A stretch of DNA of 64,000 nucleotides from Zygnema circumcarinatum SAG 698-1b. Lineage: Eukaryota > Plantae > Zygnematophyceae. The stretch spans positions 1 to 64,000 of the forward strand of contig CM074814.1 of the NCBI GenBank assembly GCA_037447605.1. Direction: 5' to 3'. Each line of letters begins with the position of its first letter. The first letter of the stretch is position 1. The notes beneath the pieces are model-generated. The model saw nothing but the letters and a program-made list of their open reading frames with translations, was not told the origin of the DNA and did no database searches. Shown one piece after another: positions 200-54,031 of this stretch. The translations under genes were made by a program, and so were the position numbers.

Positions 200-1010
200 A
201 ATTTCAGAAATTCAATGGTTGCCAACCATTGGATCACTGGTTCCAAACCAGTCGAATGGTTGTTCCAGTCCTGCGCCGCTGGTTCGCAACCAATCGACTG
301 GTTGCCAACCAGTGGCATCCACTGGTTGGAAACCAATCGACTGGTTGCAAACCAGTGGCATCCACTAGTTGGCAACCAGTCAAATGGTTGTTTCGCTCCG
401 CAACCACTGGTTGGCAACCAGTCGACTGGTTTGGAACCAGTGGATGCCACTGGTTGGCAATCAGTCGAATGGTTGTTTCGATCCAGCGGGACTGGTTGGC
501 AACCATTCGACTGGTTGCCAACCAGTGGCATCCACTGGTTCCAAATCAGTCAAATGGTTGTTTCGGTCCTCAACCACTGGTTGCCAACCAGTCGACTTGT
601 TTGTCTAATGGTCCGATCTGTGATACGTTTCACAGTTCGGACCAGTGGATCGGCAACCATTGGACAACCATTGGATGGCAATGGTTGGACGTCTACTGGT
701 TGGCAACCAGTCGAATGGTTGTTTCGGTCCGCAACCATTGGTTGGCAACCAGTCGAATGGTTGTTTCGGTCCGCAACCACTGGTTGGCAACCAGTCGAAT
801 GGTTGTTTCGGTCCGCAACCACTGGTTGGCAACCAGTCAACTGGTTTGGAACCAGTGGATGCCACTGGTTGGCAACCAGTCGACTGGTTTGGAACCAGTG
901 GATGCCACTGGTTGGCAACCAGTCGAATGGTTGTTTCGATCTGGCGGCACTGGTTGGCAACCAGTCGAATGGTTATATCCATTAAATCAAATGGTTGGCA
1001 ACCGTTAAAT
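200..1010. repeat. Complex palindromic minisatellite, ~42-bp unit (GGTTGGCAACCAGTCGAATGGTTGTTTCGGTCCGCAACCACT and variants), block 1
   Basis: Near-identical 42-bp units run in tandem at ~700-840. Palindromic cores GGTTG(G/C)CAACC and CCAGTCGACTGG recur throughout. The stop-poor unit explains the many overlapping ORFs with 14-aa repeats. Confidence 0.9.
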
Positions 1011-38978: not shown

Positions 38979-39968
38979 AGTTAGTGCGCGCTGTGGAATG
39001 TAATTTGTCAGTTGACAGGCTGACAAAGAACTTTCCGAAGATGATAGGTGGCAGCATGGCAAGCGATGGTAGATATCGTGGGCAGTAATGCCAAGGATGG
39101 TTTGCATCTTCCGAATGTACAAAGAACGGCTCTGCCTGTCATGCGGCTGCTTGATTTTCATCGTGCTGACGCCATGCCGTGCCCATTCCTTAACTTCGTG
39201 AATGTGGCGAGTGGAAGAGTCATATCAACTGTCAAAACTTTGTACATCCCACAGTTCTACTGCTTTTTCGCATTACGGCTCGGCTCGGGGATGATACGTC
39301 CGGCGCTAGTAAGTGGGGAACGTGGGAACTTTCAGTCCGGTCGCAACTTCCCCACGGCCGCTGGAAGTGGAGGGGGGTGGCTCTAGAAGTGTGGCTGCTC
39401 GCCACTTGAGCGAGCGGGCCGCACTCATGCAGGGCTGAAGAGCCTCGCAACCGGCACCAAGCTGGCAAGCTGCAACTGTTTTTCATGCGCATGCCTTCGG
39501 CAACCAAACACATCAGTGGCACAAATCAGGCAGAATTTTAGAACTGAGAAAGGTCGTGAACATTCCCTTTTGCAAAAGCAAGTGGGAAGGAGAAGAAACC
39601 AACTCAGCGTTGGCATGCGTATATAGTTGAGCGCACAGGGATGTGCGTCGAACACGTGCTTGTAAATTGTGTTAAGGGGCTGTAACTGCCACTGCCTAAC
39701 TGCATACTTGTACTCATACTCGTAGTGTGTACTCGTGCCTTTCACCTATTTTATTACGCTGTACATCGGCCCAACAGCTAGCTTGTTTATTCACCGCAAA
39801 CAAAATCTATACACTTGTGAACCAGCTATTTACAGGCAGACAACTTGCTAGTCCCAGCTATGTACAAGACATATACCCCTTAGTGCCACACCAATCTCCA
39901 TCTATCTACACAGAAAGAATTATGTACGGTTGCGAGCACACGGATCCCTTCATTTCCTCAGCTTGCGG

Positions 39969-41631
39969 TCACTCCCTACTGCTGCTGCTGCAGCCATCGG
40001 CTTCGTCGTCTGCGAAGATGGGGCGGGGAATAATGGCGCCCGTGGCCGGCGACACTTTGCTCGGCCACGAGGCCCCCCCCTCCGCCTCTGCGGATTCCAG
40101 GTCGTGCATCACCGCCTCCAGCGCCTCCTTCGCAGATCCCATCCCCTTCTGCACGACTCACAGCCCACACCCGCATCACTCGTCACCGCTCTCTCAAAAG
40201 TGATGAAAGCTGAACAATTGGGGGCAGAACAGCAAATTCATCTCTCCCTCCTGCTCCCAAAAAGCAGTACATCAACATCATCTCCAGGCCAGCAGTTAGC
40301 AGCTGTGAATACTTTCAAATCATCCGCAACCTCTTCTCAAGACTCTGAGAAGCACTACCTGCGCAGCAGTAGCCAGCGGGCCCCAGCACTCCCTGCGGTT
40401 GAATTCTGCGATGTTCGAGTGGAAGTGCACCCAGACCGGTGCAAGCTCCAAATCTGCATCTCATCTCACACTCCAGCACCCACTTCTGTCACTTTTGCGC
40501 CATCACCTTTACAGCGACGACCAAATAGCCTCCTCACACAAGGCCAAGCAGCAGGCAGCACGAAGAGCGAAGCGGCAGGGCAGGCTGCACCGACCGGGGT
40601 GCTTGGAGAAGAGCGTGCGGTCGCCATGGCGGAAGGCCTCGAGCACGACGGGCAGCTCCTTGCGGAAGATCCAAAAGCGCAGCCGCGCGATGGCGTTGAG
40701 CAGGAGGTGGCCGCCGCTGATGTGGCAGTGCACGTGCAGCGCCATGGTCTCCGGCCCTCGCCCGCTCCGCCACACGGCCAGGACCTCGTCGCGCTGCAGC
40801 CGCGAGTACCACCCGCCGAACTGCGCCCCACCAGAATCGTCAATATTAGAGGCAAACAGCACTGCTCGCAAGCTCGCCAGAGGATTGGAGAGGCAGAGAT
40901 CATGAGGAGAGCGGGAAACATGAAGCACACCTGCGCTTTGTTGAATTCCCGAGCCACTGCCAGCGTAAGCTTAGAAGTGACATCGGAGTGTGTGAGAGTG
41001 TAGGTACGAGGGCCCTGCAAGTCATCGCGCGGATGCCGATCTTCCTCCACGTTGAGGAACAGCACGCGCAGCTTGTGCGCCTCGAAGATGGCGGGGCCGA
41101 ACAGGCGAGCCTGCACACAGGTCACGAGTAACCAGCTGCTCATATAACTTCGCGCGAGGAAATCCGCCACACACCTTGCAGATTATCAATCATGGAAGCT
41201 TGGCATTCCGACAATTTCATATTATCCATTTACTTTTTCTGGGTCTTGGACGAGGCGAGGCTAGCACAGAGGCGTCAGCATTCGATCCAGACCTGGATTC
41301 CAGCTTTGCCAGTCCTCGCCAAATTTCCTTCCCTTGTCCCTTTGCGCAGCCCACATCCAGATCGCCCTCCCGGCCCTTCCTCTTCCAGAGACGCTCCTCC
41401 TTCCCCACCTGAGCGGTAGATCCGCCACATGCTCCCGCAGCTCCACGCGAGAGGCTCCCCACCTCCCTCTTTCAGAGCCTCCGAGTGGCTCACGCATCCT
41501 CCCCTCCTCAGAGAGGCAGAGAGAGAAGGAACAGGGCAGCCTCCACTCTCGTCCACAGCCCTCTCCCGCACTGCTCCCACCCCTCTCGCCACCGCAGCAG
41601 CCCTCAGACTGTGGCATCCTGCTGCCGCCAT
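39969..41631 (-). CDS. SGR: STAY-GREEN magnesium dechelatase (SGR/NYE family), 5 exons
   Basis: Exons 41631-41293 (exon-1 donor is the least certain), 41110-40931, 40820-40595, 40453-40359 and 40148-39969. Motifs ARLFGPAIFEAHKLRVLF, PRTYTLTHSDVTSKLTLAV, RLQRDEVLA, LHVHCHISGG, IFRKELPVVLEAFRHGD and VWVHFHS...FNRRECWGPL. Confidence 0.96.
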
Positions 41632-42407
41632 GGCTACACCCCTTCAGCGGCACCCCGGGTTCCTCCCTCCCCGTCTCCCCCCCGAGCTAAACAGGCTCCT
41701 CCAGATGAATCGCCCTGCGCTGGCCGGCCAAGAGCAGCATCATCTACGGGAAGCGCGCCACTCCCTATCTCCCTCCCCTCCCTTTCCGCGGCCAATCAAA
41801 GCCTTTTTCTCTCCCTCTCTCCCTTTCTCCGGTGCGGCGCAGCAGAGGGGGGCCCTGCCCTGTTGCCCTGCCCGGCGCGGCGCATGGGGGCCGCCCAGCG
41901 GCCAGTTGCCGTGCGCCACGTGACAAATGCTCCGCCGTCCTGGGAGGTCATGCGCCACGTGTGCGCCGCCGCGTGGAAAGCGTAGGGAGCGAATCAGATC
42001 CGCCGGCGCACGTGCGGAGGGGAAGGGAGACAGGCAGCGCTCGACGTGGCGGGCTGCACACCGTCCGATGTTTTCACGGACGGCGATGACGCCGCCAGCG
42101 AGGTGAGACCCGCCGCCAGCCGCGTGGAGAGCCCCATGCCCGTCACGTGGGCGAGTGGCCTTTGCCCGCGTGGCGGCGGCCGCCTCGGGCGGGGGGCGCC
42201 GACGGAACGCTGACGTGGACGGACGGATTCGCATGGAGCGGGGAGGCCGCGGGGGGAGGCGGGGAGGCCGCAAGGCCGCCACGTGGCCGCCTCGATGCCG
42301 CCGAGGGGCGCTCGCCGGACGGACGTACGGACGGAGCTGGCGCGGGTTAGGGGAGGGAGGGAGGCTGAGGCGGAGGGAGGGAGCGATCTGCGCGATCCGC
42401 CATAGCC
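41632..42407. promoter_or_regulatory. Bidirectional SGR/PAO promoter with a G-box/ABRE cluster
   Basis: CACGTG occurs at 41917, 41956, 42009, 42144 and 42280 (the last as GCCACGTGGC). ACGTGGC is at 42044 and TGACGTGG at 42211. Confidence 0.7.
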
Positions 42408-45382
42408 ATGGCCGCCCCGGGGACTGTCTGCTCGCGCCACCTGACGCGCGACATCGCATGGTGGGGTTCCTCTGCCCAAGGGCCGGAGCCTGTAAGAGGC
42501 GCCTCGTCCAAGCCCGGAGCTCGGGGCGAGCAAGTGCACTGCTCTCCAGGACGCTTTCGCCGCAGTGCGAGGCGCAGACCGGCGCAGCAGTCTGCCTGGC
42601 TGGGAGGGGCAGGTCGCAGCGCTCTCCAGGGGCTTCATGAGCGATGCACGCCGCGCAGCAGGGCCGAGCGCAGTTGCGGAAGCTCCTTGCCAGCCGTATC
42701 TGCTACGGCAACACCATGGCAGAGGGAGTCGGCCGTTCCTTTGTCAGAGCCCGCGCAAAAAGATGAAGACGATGCTTCGCGGGAGGATGGAAGCGAGAAG
42801 TTTGTGTGGGAGGAGCACTGGTACCCGGTGGCGCTTTTGGAGGACCTTCCTGTGGACAAGCCGGTGCCCTTCCAGCTGCTGGGCATCGATCTCGTGCTCT
42901 GGCGAGATCCGGAGGGCCGCTGGAGGGCCTTCAAAGACTTGTGTCCGCATCGACTAGCTCCCCTTTCTGTACGTGGCACCGCATTTCTCTAACCTCCCAA
43001 AGAAGCCAAGATAGCATTCAACCTGCAGCCACTTGTTTTAGGGCTTCATCTGTTCACTCCTCGTGGGCTTGACTCCCGAGGAAGTCATGGGGGCACACAT
43101 TATTCTTATGACAGCGGCACACTTTGATCCTGCCGAAGACAGGTTTAGTTCAGTAGCGCCTGAATAACTCGGAATTGGGCGGGAGCACCACAGGAGGGGC
43201 GTTTGGACGCGCAGGGCCTCCTGCAGTGCTCTTACCACGGGTGGTCGTTCCGCGGCGACGGCGGGTGTGCGCGCATTCCGCAGGCGGCGGGGGAGGGCGC
43301 GGAGGCGCGCGCCGCGCAGTCTCCGCGCGCGTGCGCGGTCGCGTACCCCGCCCGCGCCGCGCAGGGGCTGCTCTTCGTCTGGCCGGACCCCTACGGCTGG
43401 GAGCAGGCCGCGGCCGCGGACCCGCCCCGGTCAGGCCTGCCTCCTCTTGCTGGCCGCGGGACAGGGGATAGGAGGGGTTTTAGCTTCAGGTTTAGGGGGG
43501 GGAAGGGAGGGAAAATTGCTTTTATTCGCAATTCATTTCGCGTCGCCTGCACCGCTGTACTATCCACTTTGCTTAGGGCTCCAACCGTTCCGCAGAGGTG
43601 TTTCATGGCAAGTGAGGACTTGAAGCCCTTTGGAATTGGGTCGAGTGCTGCCCCGGCCTGTCTGGGTGCGTGTGAAGAACAGTCAATTTGACGTGGATAG
43701 TATGTTGGGTTGCTTTTGGGACATCCCCCACAGGCTGCCTGATGTGTTCGACGACCCGTCCTATGCAACTGTGACTATTCAGCGAGACTTGTTCTACGGG
43801 TACGACACTCTCATGGAGAATGTGGCTGATCCGTCCCACATCGATTTTGCACATCATAAGGTAAGGCGACATTTTCTCTTCGTCTCTACTATTTTTTTTG
43901 CTTCCAATTCTAAATGCTAAGTCAATTCTGTCATTCCTGGTATGTCGTGTAAAGACGCACTTTGCAATAGTCATAGAAGCTGAGTCTGTGCTTTCACCTG
44001 TGCCAAGGATCAAACGTGGTTAGTTTGGTGTGAGAGACTGCTTCAATCAGAAGGTGCAGGTTGGAATGTCGAATTGAGTGGGGCGTGTGACGCCACGTGC
44101 CGGCTGCAGGTGACGGGGCGGCGGGACCGGGCCCGGCCCCTTCCCTTCCAGGTGGAGCAGAGCGGCCCCTCCGGCTTTGCGGGCGCGGCGGAGGGGAACC
44201 CGCGCATCGTGTCGACCTTCCAGGCGCCCACCTACATGGAGAACAAGTACGCCCGCCCCCCCCCCCCTTGCCTGCCTGTCTGTCTGCCCGCCCGCCGCGC
44301 CCGGGGGGGGGGGGGGGNNNNNNNNNNGGGGGGGGGGGGGGGCGCCGCTTGAAGCAGTTCTGCTGATCTCAGTGTCCCCGCTCGCGCTCTTGTGCAGACT
44401 GGAGCTGAAAGTGCCGCTGCCCCTGCTGGGAGAGCAGAACTGGGAGATATGGATCTGCTCCTTCAACGTGCCGATGGCTCCTGGAAAGACGCGGTCCATT
44501 GTCTGCAGGTGCGTGCTGCCGCATGCATCTGCGTGCCGGCTGCTGCGCTGGCCAGCGCGCCGTGCTCACTCTCACGAGCCGTGTCTCCCTCGTGTGTGGG
44601 TGTGTGCAGTGCCCGGAATTTTTCAAAGCTGACCGCTCCCGGACCTGCGTGGTGGCAACTGTATCCGAGGTGGCTGGAGCACCTGACCTCCAACAAGGTG
44701 TATGACGGCGATATGATCGTCCTGCAGGGCCAGGAGAAAGCCTTCTATCGAGGCGCGGGGGCGGACCATTCCGTTTCTGCCAACAACTACAGCAAGCTGA
44801 CCTACACGCCCACAGCGGCGGACCGCTTCGTGCTTGCGTTCCGCAACTGGCTGCGGCGCTACGGCGGCGGGGAGCCTTCCTGGGCCGCCGGGACCAAGCA
44901 GCAGGCGGGGCCGCTCCCCTCGACTGTCCTTTCTAAGCGGGAGGTCAGCGCTGCACTGCCCGTCCGCCCGTCCGCCCGTCCGTCCGTGCTTGCTTGCTTG
45001 CCGGCGCGGCGCGGCGAGAGTAAGCAGAGAGACGAGAGGGAGGGAGGGAGGGAGAGAGTGCGGGTCACCTCTGAGCAGTGGGCGGGCGGGGCGGGGTGTG
45101 GCGGCGCAGATGCTGGACCGGCTCTCGCAGCACACGGCGGTGTGCGCGGCGTGCCGCGGCGCGCTGGCGGGCGTGCGGAGGGCCGCGGCGGCGCTGGCGG
45201 GCGCGGCGGTGCTCCTGCTCGCGGCCGCGCCGCTCCTCGGGGGGGGGGCGCCGCTGCTGCTGCACAGGGCGCTGCTGGCGGGGGCGGCGCTGGCCATGGC
45301 GGGGGCGGCGGCGTGGCTCAAGTTCCGGCTCGAGCCGCAGTTCATCTTCGTCGACTACGTGCACTCCGACATCCCCGACTGA
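42408..45382 (+). CDS. PAO: Pheophorbide a oxygenase (PAO/ACD1/LLS1), Rieske non-heme iron oxygenase, 7 exons
   Basis: Exons 42408-42968, 43194-43429, 43734-43860, 44110-44246, 44398-44508, 44610-44943 and 45110-45382. Rieske motifs CPHRLAPLS...CSYHGW; mononuclear Fe motif ENVADPSHIDFAHH; PAO-specific VTGRRDRARPLPF, WICSFNVPMAPGKTRSIVCSARNF and YDGDMIVLQGQEK; C-terminal CAAC and DYVHSDI. Confidence 0.98.
44318..44327. other. 10-nt assembly gap (N) inside a poly-G run in PAO intron 4
   Basis: Ten N bases flanked by G homopolymers. Confidence 0.99.
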
Positions 45383-46408
45383 CTCACTCACTCACTCGCG
45401 AGGGGGGAGGGCACTGTACATACTGCTCCTGCTGCTGCTGCTGCCGCTGGCGTGTACATACACACATAGCTCACACGCACGCGCGCGAGAGAAGTAACGC
45501 CGGGCCGTGCGGGATGCAAGTCCGCGCACCTACGGGTCGGCCATTTGGGGCCGTGTTCGCTCGCGTGCAATAAGTAAGAGTGCCTATTAGTAGGTTTTGA
45601 GTGCGGGGCGCGGCTCGGAGGGGCCATATTGTGGCCGCCTCACAAGTAGGGTAGCGTAGGGTAGGGTGCAGACGAGGCGTAGGCCGAGGCTTTTGTGCGT
45701 GGCGGACCTAGACCATCATTGTGTAGGTGTAGCCGCTCTCGTGTATTTTTGATTTTTTTCAGCACTCTGTTGCAGCGGCATGCACATGCGGGGGGTGTGG
45801 TGTGGTGTGCTGCGGTCTGGTCGTGTTGGAAATAGACGAGTTCGACGGACCAGACGCATGACACGCGTGCTGTGCAACCACAGTCCGGAAGAATGCAGAG
45901 AACAGCCAGAGACATGCATGCAAATGCACACGAGTGTCGCAAACAAACCAAACGAAAACCACAACCCAACGCTGCGGCCACCTCCCGCCCCGCCTCGCCC
46001 TGCACGCGAGTCAAGCAAGCAGCGGTTCCATCCCCTTCGACCTCGGGCCGCCCGCCCCTCGCTCGCCGTCGTCCGTACGCTCGCACGCGCGGTCCGCGGG
46101 CTCTCGCCCTCCCTCCCTCCCTCCCGCGCGTGACGCGTGTCACGCTGCGCGCGCCGCTCGCCGCATTCCACCTGCGCCGTCCGATGCCGCCCCGCCCCGC
46201 CGCGGCCCGGGACGCGCCGAGATGCGCCGTCAGGCCCTGAACCCTCCCGCCCGGCCTCTCCCCCCCTCGCCCGCGCCGCCTCCGCAGGCAGGCAGGCAGG
46301 CAGCGAGCGTAGCTCTGCTACTAGTCGCTTGGACTCGCGCCTTTGCTCAGTCCTAGTCTTCCATCCTCTCCTCTCCTCTCCTCTCCTCTCTGCGACGCGC
46401 CCGCTCTG

Positions 46409-50567
<4,159 letters not shown>

Positions 50568-51220: not shown

Positions 51221-54031
51221 TCAGAAGCGCGGGTTCCAGTACGAGCGATGGCCGGGATGCCCTCCCCATCCTCGCAGTGACACAGGGGGGGGACGAGAGG
51301 CGGAGCTGCTGCACTGGACCTCGGCCTCGCCCGCCCTGTCAGATTCGGCCGGCTCCATACAGCTCTCATCCTCATCCTCATCCTCTGGACCGCGGGAGAT
51401 GGGGATTGGCACATGCGTTGGCAATATCGCATGCATGCTTTCAGTGTCAGGCTTGAACCCCAACTGCCCTCGTTCTCCTGATCCGTACGCCAAGACCTGC
51501 AGGATCACAAAAAGAATGAAATAATTAAACTGCGGACTACGACCTTGTGGGGCGAATAGAGAGAGGAGATGCGTCGCTGCGTGTACCTCCCCCAGATCAG
51601 TTAAGACCAGAGTGTGCCCTGTGCCCATGGCCGCCTGCACTATGCGATAGCTCGATAACTCGAGGGCTCGCTTCGCTGCCCAGCCGAATGTGTACATGTG
51701 CCCTGTGTCGCTGATTGCGAAGGTGCGCTTGCTGGCAGCTCCCACCTGCATAGCCACTCGGGTGAGTTTGGGAGAATGAACTGGAATTCTATAGAGCAAG
51801 GAGCACAGCCACCTTCAAACGTTTGCTTTCAGTGCGCAACAATGCATTTGTTCCGCGGATGGCTCCCTGAGTACATCATCTGCAAGGAGGCATGGATACC
51901 GTTCAGAAAACCGGTTCGAGTGGCAGTGCACCTGCACAATGCGCGCTTTGTCGAGACCCTTCACTCGCTGCGGAACCATGGCATCGCCGTAGCCGCCATG
52001 GCCGAGCCTCCCGGAGCAGCCCCACCCCCACGTGTAGACCTCCCCGCAAGCGGTGAGGGCCACTGAGATATCGACTCCGCCTGAAATGGCGATCACATGA
52101 CAGCGCAGCTCTCGCAGGCGCTCCACTCTCTGTGGGCGAGGCTGGTCGTCCCACGTGCCATGACCCAACTTCCCGTTTTTCCCTTCTCCCCAAGTATACA
52201 AGTAGCCGTCTTTTGTTGATGCCAGCATATGATTTATGCCAGCTGCAATTTGGATGACCTGAAAATCGACAAAGACAGACATCTTTAACTATGTTTATAC
52301 GAGTTTAAGCCAAAACTATCCTCTCTCTGCTCCACTCTCCCTGCCTCTCTCCCCCTCTCTCTCTCCCCGTCTTTCTCTCTCCCTGCATTCCTTTCCTATC
52401 CCTTTCCACTCTCTCGTGCTCCATCCCCAAACAATGCAAAACTTAGCCTTTGGCACTTGGTATGCGTGTCAACTGAGTAAATCACATTCACGGTAATCAA
52501 CCACGCCACCCAGCCCACCTGCTTGTCTTCCAAGGCCTGTGCCCGGCGAGGAATGCTTTCATCATGCACAATGCCCTGCCCAAGGCAGCCCTTCCTGTTG
52601 CTGCCAAAGGTGAGAACATCGCCTTCACTCGAAAGAACTGCCGTGAAATCAAACCCAGCAGCTACTTGGACAACCTTGAATTTCACCAATCTCTCAACCA
52701 GCCTTGGAGTATTCACGCTATCCCCAAAAAGTTGTCCAAAGACTTCATCGCCGTGACCACAACAACCTCGTTGATCCATTCCAAAAGTATATACATTTCC
52801 GCCATTTGTACAAAGCACAGTATGCCGGGGTCCAGCTGACACCTGGCGAACTTGCAAACCTCGGAAACTCCCGACTTGCACGGGCCGCCAGACGTTGTGG
52901 CTGTAACCTGTACCTAACCGATAGTCTGCTCCGCAGCCGAATGAGTGCAGGACACCGCTTGGACTAACTACAAGGCTGAAATCGCGGCAGGCGATGACTT
53001 GGCCCCATTTTCGATTTTCTGCTGCGTTCAGCATCTGTAAGACGCAAGCCAGACCAGTCGGCCACAATGAGTAGCATACGTCAACGAAACATGCCAGCAG
53101 TCCGCTTGAGCTGACGCTCAACTGATCTCCTCAAACTTCGGCCCACTCTCTACAATGCACTTGCACCTATGACTTGAGATAAACACTGAGTTTTGGATAT
53201 TGCAACGTGTTCAGCAGGAAGAGTTAACCAATTTTCTTGGTTACATCCGTTAAGGTGGTAAACCAGACACAGGCGAAAGCAGATTGTAAAGGAAGGAGAG
53301 GTAGATGAACATAAATTATACGATTCACCTCCAGATAATGAAGAGTGAGCTTCCACGAGCCTCCACATCGCTGACGTAGCCTCTGTCTGTTGTCTTCCTG
53401 CATGTACAAGATTGGCATTAGTCAACGTCCAGTATTTTTTATGGCTTCATACTTTTCCCCACCTTCTCACTCAAATGGCGGCGAACCATGCCAAGAAAAA
53501 AGCAGGAACAAAGATCAAACTCCAGAGACTGAACGCATTAATCTACCACAGGCATATGATATGCAAACAAGAGACAGAGGGAAACAGAAAGAGCGAGCAA
53601 TGATTTTCCGCGACGTCTTTCTCATTGCCCGTACATTTGTTCTCATATCCTCCATCCCGTCTTTCTAAAATTTATCCTCTAAATATCGTCATATGGTACC
53701 ACAAACATAACTAGCATGTACACATAGAAAGGGCTTGTGAGTTGACAGAAATTCCAAAAAGACTCTGGCACGGGAAAGGACAGTTGCTTACAGAGAGACG
53801 ATTGAACAGAGAGTCCCTGAGGCAGGCTTCCAAGGCTGCCAGCGTAGTGAGCGGCAGCGCCATGGGTAGTTCCCCCACCATCACATCCACTGCCTGCTTG
53901 AACAGCTGGCAGGTCGCCTCACAGACCGCCAGCTGTCTCGCCGAAAGCCCATAGTGCGATAGAAGACGCAGCAGAACCTCGGGAGGAACGTCCAGAAGAG
54001 TGAGCTCCTCTGGAGCATTCAACTTCTCCAT
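51221..54031 (-). CDS. F-box-like N-terminus plus RCC1-repeat beta-propeller protein (Arabidopsis At3g26100-like), 6 exons
   Basis: N-terminus LLDVPPEVLLRLLSHYGLSARQLAVCEATCQLF, then RQRCGGSWKLTLHYL and repeated RCC1 motifs (VSAGPRHT...VYTFG; VAAGFDFT...TFGSNRKGCLG; AAGINH...YTWGEGKNGKLGHG; YTWGWGCSGRLGHG). An in-frame stop lies just upstream of ATG 54031. Confidence 0.88.

What the first reader, a model, noticed from the sequence alone, without database searches (positions are those of the whole stretch)
39969..45382. SGR and PAO, the core chlorophyll-breakdown enzymes, form a head-to-head gene pair
Seen in sequence: SGR (minus strand, ATG 41631) and PAO (plus strand, ATG 42408) are divergent, with only 776 bp and no other gene between them. 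Established knowledge: SGR removes Mg from chlorophyll a, and PAO opens the pheophorbide a ring in the PAO/phyllobilin pathway; PAO loss causes phototoxic pheophorbide build-up. As I recall, they are not neighbours in Arabidopsis (SGR1 chr4, PAO chr3). Inference: this is an operon-like chlorophyll-catabolism module whose shared promoter couples the step that makes the phototoxic intermediate to the step that detoxifies it. It may be an ancestral streptophyte arrangement. I know of no description of it.
Basis: partly seen in the sequence, partly recalled or inferred. Interest (0 to 1): 0.85.

Follow-up and report, generated by a model that had tools for sequence, protein, structure and literature searches.

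The report
Head-to-head SGR and PAO genes
In this streptophyte alga, two key chlorophyll-breakdown genes (SGR and PAO) really do sit back to back around a short spacer packed with G-box/ABRE-type motifs, but no other green lineage I could check shares the arrangement, so it looks like a local, possibly co-regulated, gene pair and not an ancient module.

Summary
SGR lies on the minus strand (5 exons, 39969-41631, 339 aa). PAO lies on the plus strand (7 exons, 42408-45382, 592 aa). Both are intact with GT-AG introns throughout, diverge from start codons 776 bp apart, and have nothing recognisable between them. The N gap (44318-44327) lies inside PAO intron 4 and removes no coding sequence.

The spacer is 72% GC and holds 7 ACGTG (G-box/ABRE) cores, against 0.57 expected (0 of 2000 shuffles). 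On each side it has a leader that is G-rich on that gene's own sense strand. This fits a bidirectional promoter.

No partner gene lay within 10 kb in three Closterium strains, Marchantia, Sphagnum, Selaginella or two chlorophytes. In about ten further land plants, contig lengths put the two genes on different contigs. The flanks of the pair hold no other chlorophyll-catabolism gene.

The "ancestral streptophyte arrangement" and "operon-like module" readings are therefore not supported. SGR and PAO are also not consecutive steps, because pheophytinase acts between them. The best reading is a lineage-restricted divergent pair, plausibly co-induced through the shared G-box array; co-expression is untested. 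An earlier scan note (s1-378422) had already flagged the array.

Interest is modest.

The parts
39969..41631 (-). SGR (STAY-GREEN / Mg-dechelatase) gene. CDS exons 41631-41293, 41110-40931, 40820-40595, 40453-40359, 40148-39969; 339 aa.
   Evidence: Spliced model with GT-AG introns. Pfam Staygreen in three exons. All 52 columns invariant in six reference SGRs are kept. Sits in the canonical SGR clade next to Closterium.
42408..45382 (+). PAO (pheophorbide a oxygenase) gene. CDS exons 42408-42968, 43194-43429, 43734-43860, 44110-44246, 44398-44508, 44610-44943, 45110-45382; 592 aa.
   Evidence: Spliced model with GT-AG introns. Pfam Rieske and PaO. Rieske CxH..CxxH, iron-site motif, CxxC and hydrophobic C-terminus present. 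55-60% identity over about 520-550 aligned residues to Marchantia, Taxus, Nymphaea and Closterium PAO.
41632..42407 (.). Divergent spacer between the two start codons: 776 bp, 72% GC. Candidate bidirectional promoter plus both 5' leaders.
   Evidence: No Pfam, tRNA or Rfam match inside it.
41917..42285 (.). Array of 7 ACGTG cores (G-box/ABRE type) at 41918, 41957, 42010, 42044, 42145, 42213 and 42281. Five are CACGTG palindromes and two are GACGTGG.
   Evidence: 7 observed against 0.57 +/- 0.73 in 2000 dinucleotide-preserving shuffles (maximum 4). It is the densest 776-bp stretch in the window.
41632..41823 (-). SGR-proximal leader. C-rich on the plus strand (GC skew -0.4 to -0.49), so G-rich on the SGR sense strand. 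Inferred 5' UTR.
   Evidence: Inverted repeats I1, I2 and I4-I6 pair it with the PAO-proximal leader.
42216..42407 (+). PAO-proximal leader. G-rich on the plus strand (GC skew +0.25 to +0.40). Inferred 5' UTR.
44247..44397 (+). PAO intron 4. It contains the assembly gap 44318-44327, which is flanked by long G runs with a C run upstream.
   Evidence: GT..AG borders, and homologues run colinear across the junction.

Best explanation
Two intact nuclear genes for plastid chlorophyll-breakdown enzymes are transcribed divergently from a 776-bp GC-rich spacer. One is SGR, the Mg-dechelatase that commits chlorophyll a to breakdown. The other is PAO, the Rieske oxygenase that opens the pheophorbide a ring. 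The centre of the spacer (about 41824-42215 and on to 42285) carries seven G-box/ABRE-type ACGTG cores. It is flanked by two leaders of about 190 bp, each G-rich on its own gene's sense strand. The most likely mechanism is that bZIP (ABF/ABI5/HY5-like) or bHLH (PIF-like) factors bind this one array and switch on both genes together. PAO capacity would then rise whenever SGR starts feeding chlorophyll a into the pathway. Shown here: gene identity and intactness, orientation, spacing, motif enrichment, and absence of the arrangement in every other lineage checked. Inferred: transcription start sites, factor binding and co-expression. The juxtaposition is best read as a lineage-restricted rearrangement, possibly retained because it is convenient, and not as an inherited streptophyte module.
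For: Gene models and domains. SGR clade placement 99/99 with Closterium, inside the canonical SGR clade (100/100). Top PAO hits are named pheophorbide a oxygenase wherever they carry a functional name. Spacer motif enrichment, 7 against 0.57, 0 of 2000 shuffles. Mirror-image skew and inverted repeats of the two leaders, and near-identical start-codon contexts. Distance under 1 kb meets the usual working definition of a bidirectional promoter (my knowledge). ABF2/3/4 and ABI5 bind ABREs in the Arabidopsis SGR1 promoter, and SGR interacts physically with PAO and other catabolic enzymes: PMC7511501. Promoters of 11 SGR or PAO orthologues each hold 2-6 ACGTG cores in the 1 kb upstream, about twice their locus averages in sum. 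No partner within 10 kb elsewhere.
Against: There are no expression data, no mapped start sites and no binding data. Other notes on this genome describe further G-box-rich bidirectional promoters, so the array may reflect a general promoter style and not a chlorophyll-specific one. One array could also serve only one of the two genes. No close relative's genome could be reached, so conservation within the alga's own order is unknown. SGR and PAO are separated in the pathway by PPH, which is not here.
Confidence: 0.6

Rival explanations
1. Chance neighbours. The two genes ended up side by side through ordinary rearrangement in a compact genome rich in head-to-head pairs. They are driven by independent core promoters, and the adjacency has no functional consequence.
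For: No conservation in any of the genomes checked, and no shared flanking genes either. Many head-to-head pairs and G-box-rich promoters are noted elsewhere in this genome. With thousands of same-pathway gene pairs in a genome, several adjacent ones are expected by chance (inference).
Against: One dense, central array of 7 ACGTG cores sits between symmetric leaders. This motif class controls SGR in Arabidopsis (PMC7511501). For two specific genes among roughly 15-20 thousand, the a priori chance of adjacency is about 1 in 10,000 (inference).
Confidence: 0.3
2. Ancestral streptophyte (or zygnematophyte) chlorophyll-catabolism module, inherited from the common ancestor and lost repeatedly.
For: None found. 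The only support is that close relatives of this alga could not be examined.
Against: Absent in Closterium (a zygnematophyte; SGR loci L003 and L084, PAO loci L001, L088, L089, L090), Marchantia, Sphagnum, Selaginella and two chlorophytes. Contig lengths place SGR and PAO on different contigs in Riccia, Calypogeia, Taxus, Adiantum, Cryptomeria, Canna and other land plants. Arabidopsis has SGR1 on chromosome 4 and PAO on chromosome 3 (my knowledge).
Confidence: 0.04
3. Assembly artefact: a mis-join brings two unlinked genes together.
For: An N gap flanked by homopolymer runs lies inside the finding.
Against: The gap is inside PAO intron 4, 1.9 kb downstream of the PAO start. The whole spacer, SGR and PAO exons 1-4 are continuous sequence. 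PAO exons on both sides of the gap are colinear and in phase.
Confidence: 0.02

Closest known systems
Arabidopsis SGR1/NYE1 promoter control by ABF2/3/4, ABI5 and PIF4/5 through ABRE and G-box elements
   Same: The same gene (SGR orthologue) and the same motif class (ACGTG cores) lie upstream. PAO is co-induced with SGR in senescence and ABA responses (PMC7511501; ABF activation of other catabolic genes is my recollection of Gao et al. 2016).
   Different: In Arabidopsis the genes are on different chromosomes with separate promoters. Here one array lies between both genes. No binding or expression data exist for the alga.
Bidirectional (head-to-head, under 1 kb) gene pairs of functionally related genes in eukaryotes, such as yeast GAL1-GAL10 and histone H2A-H2B pairs
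   Same: Divergent orientation, a short shared spacer, regulatory sites in the middle, and partners from one pathway.
   Different: The classical examples are conserved across species and shown to be co-regulated. This pair is so far seen in one genome only and co-regulation is untested.
Plant metabolic gene clusters
   Same: Non-homologous genes of one pathway are physically linked.
   Different: The usual definition needs three or more pathway genes. Here there are two, the flanks hold none, and the pathway is primary catabolism and not specialised metabolism.
Head-to-head UGlyAH-UAH ureide-catabolism pair noted earlier in this same genome (s1-355314)
   Same: Same genome, same layout, and two enzymes of one nitrogen-salvage-type catabolic pathway.
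   Different: That pair was reported as shared with two mosses. SGR-PAO is not found in the one moss checked here (Sphagnum). I did not re-test the earlier claim.

Membership tests
SGR / Mg-dechelatase (Pfam Staygreen PF12638) | Staygreen domain over its full length | tested here: met
   Three exons match profile positions 2-50, 53-117 and 122-145 of 147, each above the gathering score.
SGR / Mg-dechelatase (Pfam Staygreen PF12638) | Conserved core residues (THSD, RDE, HVHCH, SGGH, ECWGP blocks) | tested here: met
   All 52 columns invariant in six algal and bryophyte SGRs are identical in the window protein. That these include the catalytic His/Asp residues is my recollection, not tested.
SGR / Mg-dechelatase (Pfam Staygreen PF12638) | Placement in the canonical streptophyte SGR/SGRL clade and not in a divergent Staygreen subfamily | tested here: met
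   Groups with Closterium and three zygnematophyte-like transcripts (99/99), inside a 100/100 clade with land-plant SGR and SGRL. Mesotaenium ME000013S00790 falls outside that clade.
SGR / Mg-dechelatase (Pfam Staygreen PF12638) | C-terminal Cys-rich motif of land-plant SGR1/SGR2 (absent in SGRL) | tested here: not met
   No such motif in the C-terminus. The nearest algal relatives P0241 and P0242 also lack it, while Marchantia and Nothoceros have it. The protein therefore cannot be assigned to the SGR or the SGRL subtype.
SGR / Mg-dechelatase (Pfam Staygreen PF12638) | Mg-dechelatase activity on chlorophyll a | not testable with these tools
   Needs a recombinant enzyme assay.
PAO (ACD1/LLS1) branch of Rieske non-haem iron oxygenases | Rieske [2Fe-2S] motif CxH-x(15-18)-CxxH | tested here: met
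   Motif at residue 179, spanning the exon 1/2 junction.
PAO (ACD1/LLS1) branch of Rieske non-haem iron oxygenases | Mononuclear iron site motif | tested here: met
   N-x2-D-x2-H-x4-H at residue 295.
PAO (ACD1/LLS1) branch of Rieske non-haem iron oxygenases | PaO domain (PF08417), C-terminal CxxC and hydrophobic anchor | tested here: met
   PaO 37.4 bits against a cut-off of 27. CAAC at residue 514 and hydrophobic windows from residue 521 to about 575.
PAO (ACD1/LLS1) branch of Rieske non-haem iron oxygenases | Orthology to PAO and not to the paralogues PTC52, TIC55 or CAO | tested here: inconclusive
   Of the 120 best hits, all that carry a functional name are called PAO. Full-length identity to plant PAOs is 55-60%. 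No tree with paralogue outgroups could be built because none were retrieved. Orthology is very likely but not formally shown.
Bidirectional-promoter gene pair | Divergent genes less than 1 kb apart with no gene between | tested here: met
   776 bp ATG to ATG. No Pfam, tRNA or Rfam match in between.
Bidirectional-promoter gene pair | Shared cis-elements placed between the two starts | tested here: met
   7 ACGTG cores against 0.57 expected, lying between mirror-image leaders.
Bidirectional-promoter gene pair | Correlated expression that depends on the shared region | not testable with these tools
   No transcriptome or start-site data were reachable.
Conserved pathway module / metabolic gene cluster | Three or more pathway genes linked | tested here: not met
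   The flanks from 30 to 56 kb show only an Orn/DAP/Arg-decarboxylase-like exon and an RCC1-repeat gene. No PPH, RCCR, NYC1 or HCAR was found. This used long ORFs only, so genes with small exons could have been missed.
Conserved pathway module / metabolic gene cluster | Arrangement conserved in other lineages | tested here: not met
   No partner within 10 kb at 13 loci from 10 genome assemblies (8 taxa).

The most novel reading that the evidence does not exclude
The SGR-PAO pair is a selected co-regulation unit within this alga's own lineage (for example Zygnematales). Its single G-box/ABRE array would show that ABF/ABI5- or PIF-type control of chlorophyll catabolic genes, known from Arabidopsis, was already in place before land plants, here condensed into one bidirectional switch.
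Probability: 0.2. Interest if true: 0.6.

Novelty: new member of a known kind. Interest (0 to 1): 0.3.

Why it matters
If the array drives both genes, this is a compact natural test bed of under 0.8 kb. It could show how a streptophyte alga couples entry into chlorophyll breakdown with removal of a phototoxic intermediate. It could also show whether the ABRE/G-box logic of senescence-type degreening predates land plants. I found no description of SGR-PAO linkage in the searchable literature. As it stands the pair is a single-genome juxtaposition, so it carries little evolutionary weight.

Tried and rejected
1. Spirogloea and Mesotaenium gene IDs, which encode scaffold order. Only the Spirogloea PAO (SM000020S05971) and a divergent Mesotaenium Staygreen paralogue (ME000013S00790) surfaced. 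The partner IDs did not, so neither genome could be tested.

2. Supplementary tables of the chlorophyll-degradation evolution paper PMC9306834 are not held. Its main text has no synteny statement.

3. The Logan contigs of the closest SGR and PAO relatives look like transcripts and not genomic DNA.

4. The metagenome scan with an SGR profile gave short plant or algal transcripts and bacterial contigs. Only one bacterial contig (L050) has a Rieske oxygenase near a Staygreen gene.

5. Six-frame comparison of all fetched flanks with the window found no shared neighbours beyond SGR and PAO themselves.

6. The protein-atlas look-up of PAO exon 6 added nothing beyond Pfam.

7. The first literature query, with bare abbreviations, returned only medical papers.

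8. An assembly mis-join was rejected because the gap lies in an intron far from the spacer.
Full report
**Observation.** Reading 39500-46000 and the ORF table shows exon-sized ORFs on the minus strand with SGR hallmarks. Exon-sized ORFs on the plus strand carry PAO hallmarks. Pfam confirms both. Staygreen is matched by three minus-strand pieces covering profile positions 2-145 of 147. On the plus strand, Rieske is split over two pieces and is followed by a PaO domain.

tblastn with SGR and PAO proteins from Selaginella, Riccia, Marchantia, Closterium, Taxus and others gives colinear exon hits. I built spliced models from these.

- SGR: exons 41631-41293, 41110-40931, 40820-40595, 40453-40359 and 40148-39969. 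The product is 339 aa.
- PAO: exons 42408-42968, 43194-43429, 43734-43860, 44110-44246, 44398-44508, 44610-44943 and 45110-45382. The product is 592 aa.
- Every intron is GT-AG and both reading frames are open from ATG to stop.

The two start codons are 776 bp apart (41632-42407). Each is the first ATG after an in-frame stop, so 776 bp is the minimum spacing for these models.

**The assembly gap.** The N run 44318-44327 lies within PAO intron 4 (44247-44397) and is flanked by long G runs. The codon split by this intron (K354) and its surroundings align to seven homologues with no indel. No coding sequence is missing and the frame is continuous. The gap is 1.9 kb from the PAO start. The spacer, the whole SGR gene and PAO exons 1-4 form one uninterrupted stretch, so the adjacency itself does not depend on the gap.

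**Identity of the genes.** The window SGR keeps all 52 columns that are invariant in six algal and bryophyte SGRs, including the THSD, RDE and HVHCH blocks. In a maximum-likelihood tree it groups with two Closterium SGRs and three zygnematophyte-like transcripts (99/99). That group lies inside a 100/100 clade holding land-plant SGR and SGRL. It lacks the C-terminal Cys-rich motif of land-plant SGR1/2, as do its nearest algal relatives, so SGR versus SGRL cannot be assigned.

The PAO protein has the Rieske CxH..CxxH motif, the mononuclear-iron motif, the PaO domain, a C-terminal CxxC and a hydrophobic tail. Of its 120 best database matches, every one with a functional name is called pheophorbide a oxygenase. 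Full-length identity to Marchantia, Taxus, Nymphaea and Closterium PAO is 55-60%. I could not retrieve PTC52 or TIC55 outgroups. PAO orthology is therefore very likely but not formally shown. The tree places the organism among the Zygnematophyceae, and no hit was identical to the window's proteins.

**Is anything between or around them?** The long GC-driven ORFs in the spacer have no Pfam match. There is no tRNA and no Rfam family. In the flanks, the largest ORFs from 30 to 39.9 kb have no Pfam match. To the right there is an Orn/DAP/Arg-decarboxylase-like exon near 49.4 kb and an RCC1-repeat gene at 51.2-53.1 kb. No other chlorophyll-catabolism gene was seen, so this is a pair and not a cluster. 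Genes with small exons could have been missed by this ORF-based scan.

**The spacer.**
- It is 72% GC and holds seven ACGTG cores, at 41918, 41957, 42010, 42044, 42145, 42213 and 42281. Five are CACGTG G-boxes, one of them the perfect GCCACGTGGC. Two are GACGTGG, an ABRE-like form.
- Dinucleotide-preserving shuffles of the spacer give 0.57 +/- 0.73 cores, with a maximum of 4 in 2000 trials. No other 776-bp stretch of the window exceeds 4.
- GC skew on the plus strand is -0.4 to -0.49 from 41530 to 41823. It is near +0.1 across the array and +0.25 to +0.40 from 42216 to 42411.
- Each gene is therefore preceded by about 190 bp that is G-rich on its own sense strand. Inverted repeats pair these two leaders.
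- The two start codons sit in a 13-nt inverted repeat matching at 12 of 13 positions (I10).
- I read this as two divergent 5' leaders around a central regulatory core of about 390 bp. That sense-strand G excess marks transcribed leaders in plants is my recollection, not a result here.
- The array had already been flagged separately by the scan (s1-378422). My counts agree with that note.

**Link to known regulation.** In Arabidopsis, ABF2/3/4 and ABI5 bind ABREs in the SGR1 promoter and drive ABA-induced degreening. SGR also interacts physically with PAO and the other catabolic enzymes (PMC7511501). As a weak independent check, I counted ACGTG cores in the 1 kb upstream of 11 SGR or PAO orthologues. 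They came from Closterium, Marchantia, Selaginella, Sphagnum, Astrephomene and Haematococcus. Each promoter has 2-6 cores. The total is 32, against about 15 expected from locus-wide averages. The Closterium copies are not independent of one another. This is consistent with an old G-box/ABRE input to these genes, but none of these promoters approaches the density seen here.

**Conservation.** This is the key test, and it is negative wherever I could look.
- Closterium sp. Naga37s-1: the SGR locus L003 and three PAO loci (L001, L088, L089).
- Closterium Yama58-4: the SGR locus L084.
- Closterium NIES-64: the PAO locus L090.
- Land plants: Marchantia PAO (L002), Selaginella SGR (L085) and Sphagnum SGR (L086).
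- Chlorophytes: Astrephomene (L091) and Haematococcus (L092) SGR loci.

None has the partner gene within 10 kb, either in the annotation or by tblastn with my models. No other flanking gene is shared with the window either.

Contig lengths reported with the database hits put SGR and PAO on different contigs in Riccia, Calypogeia, Taxus, Adiantum, Cryptomeria, Canna, Aristolochia, Silene, Dillenia and others. These lengths are the longest contig per protein cluster, so this is indicative only. Arabidopsis SGR1 (chromosome 4) and PAO (chromosome 3) are unlinked, from my own knowledge.

I could not reach the genomes of Zygnema, Mesotaenium, Spirogloea, Penium, Chara or Coleochaete. The nearest Logan contigs look like transcripts. 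The metagenome scan gave no algal genomic contig.

**Chance.** For two named genes among roughly 15-20 thousand, immediate adjacency has an a priori probability near 1 in 10,000. The pair was picked after the fact, however, from a genome-wide reading. Thousands of same-pathway gene pairs could have been noticed, so several adjacent ones are expected in any genome. Other notes on this genome show many head-to-head pairs and further G-box-rich bidirectional promoters. Adjacency alone therefore proves nothing. The argument for function rests on the spacer's content.

**Interpretation.** The pathway order is SGR (chlorophyll a to pheophytin a), then PPH (to pheophorbide a), then PAO (ring opening), then RCCR. 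SGR and PAO are not consecutive steps, and SGR does not itself make the most phototoxic intermediate.

The coupling idea still makes sense in a looser form. SGR is the committing step, and PAO is the step whose shortfall is lethal in light. My best explanation (about 0.6) is a lineage-restricted divergent pair co-induced from one G-box/ABRE array. The main rival (about 0.3) is a functionally neutral juxtaposition with independent promoters. An ancestral module (about 0.04) and an assembly artefact (about 0.02) are disfavoured.

**Novelty and score.** I found no paper describing SGR-PAO linkage or a shared promoter. The kind of thing, a head-to-head pair of related genes with regulatory sites in the middle, is well known. 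This is therefore a new member of a known kind. It is a tidy candidate for experiments on pre-land-plant control of degreening, but without conservation or expression data its interest is modest (0.3).

Noticed in passing
L050:2347-7146 (metagenome contig Ga0180438_10015217): A bacterial contig carries, on one strand, CrtC (carotenoid hydratase), a PNPOx-like gene, a full Staygreen homologue, DUF3159, DUF1722, a Rieske/VanA_C oxygenase (27% identical to the window PAO) and an alpha/beta hydrolase. This trio loosely echoes SGR + PAO + PPH. It was the only one of 80 Staygreen loci from metagenomes with a PAO-like hit.
   Followed up: partly
window 41624-41636 and 42403-42415: The SGR and PAO start codons sit in a 13-nt inverted repeat (12 of 13 matching), so both genes share almost the same start context and both proteins begin Met-Ala-Ala. 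The G-rich leaders upstream are also mirror images of each other (repeats I1, I2, I4-I6).
   Followed up: partly
window 44255-44345: The assembly gap in PAO intron 4 is bounded by homopolymer runs (a C run, then long G runs on both sides of the Ns). This is probably why the assembler broke there.
   Followed up: yes
tree: P0263, P0308 and reps P0322, P0334, P0361, P0369: Mesotaenium ME000013S00790 and a Diphasiastrum protein fall outside the canonical SGR/SGRL clade with other divergent representatives. This suggests a second, little-described Staygreen subfamily in streptophytes.
   Followed up: no
L002:10001-11764; L001, L088-L090; window 42408-45382: PAO intron load differs strongly. There are six introns here, the Marchantia gene reads as one uninterrupted ORF, and Closterium copies fall into two or three large ORF pieces. 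The Closterium PAO copies b and c of Naga37s-1 (L088, L089) and the NIES-64 copy (L090) share a downstream DnaJ/Translin gene, so they look like duplicated segments.
   Followed up: partly
L087:1-771: The transcript of a close SGR relative (Logan run ERR12684108) has a 5' leader of about 770 nt before the SGR ORF. Long SGR leaders may be normal in this group, which bears on where the window's SGR start site lies.
   Followed up: no
window 791-888 and 1386-1469: ARAGORN calls a tRNA-Ala(GGC) of 98 nt and a tRNA-Gly(GCC) of 84 nt on opposite strands. Both are longer than usual, so they may contain introns or be false calls.
   Followed up: no
window 49355-49729 and 51224-53121: The right-hand neighbours of PAO are an Orn/DAP/Arg-decarboxylase-like exon (plus strand) and an RCC1-repeat gene (minus strand). 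The 10 kb to the left of SGR (30-39.9 kb, about 50% GC) has no Pfam-recognisable long ORF.
   Followed up: partly
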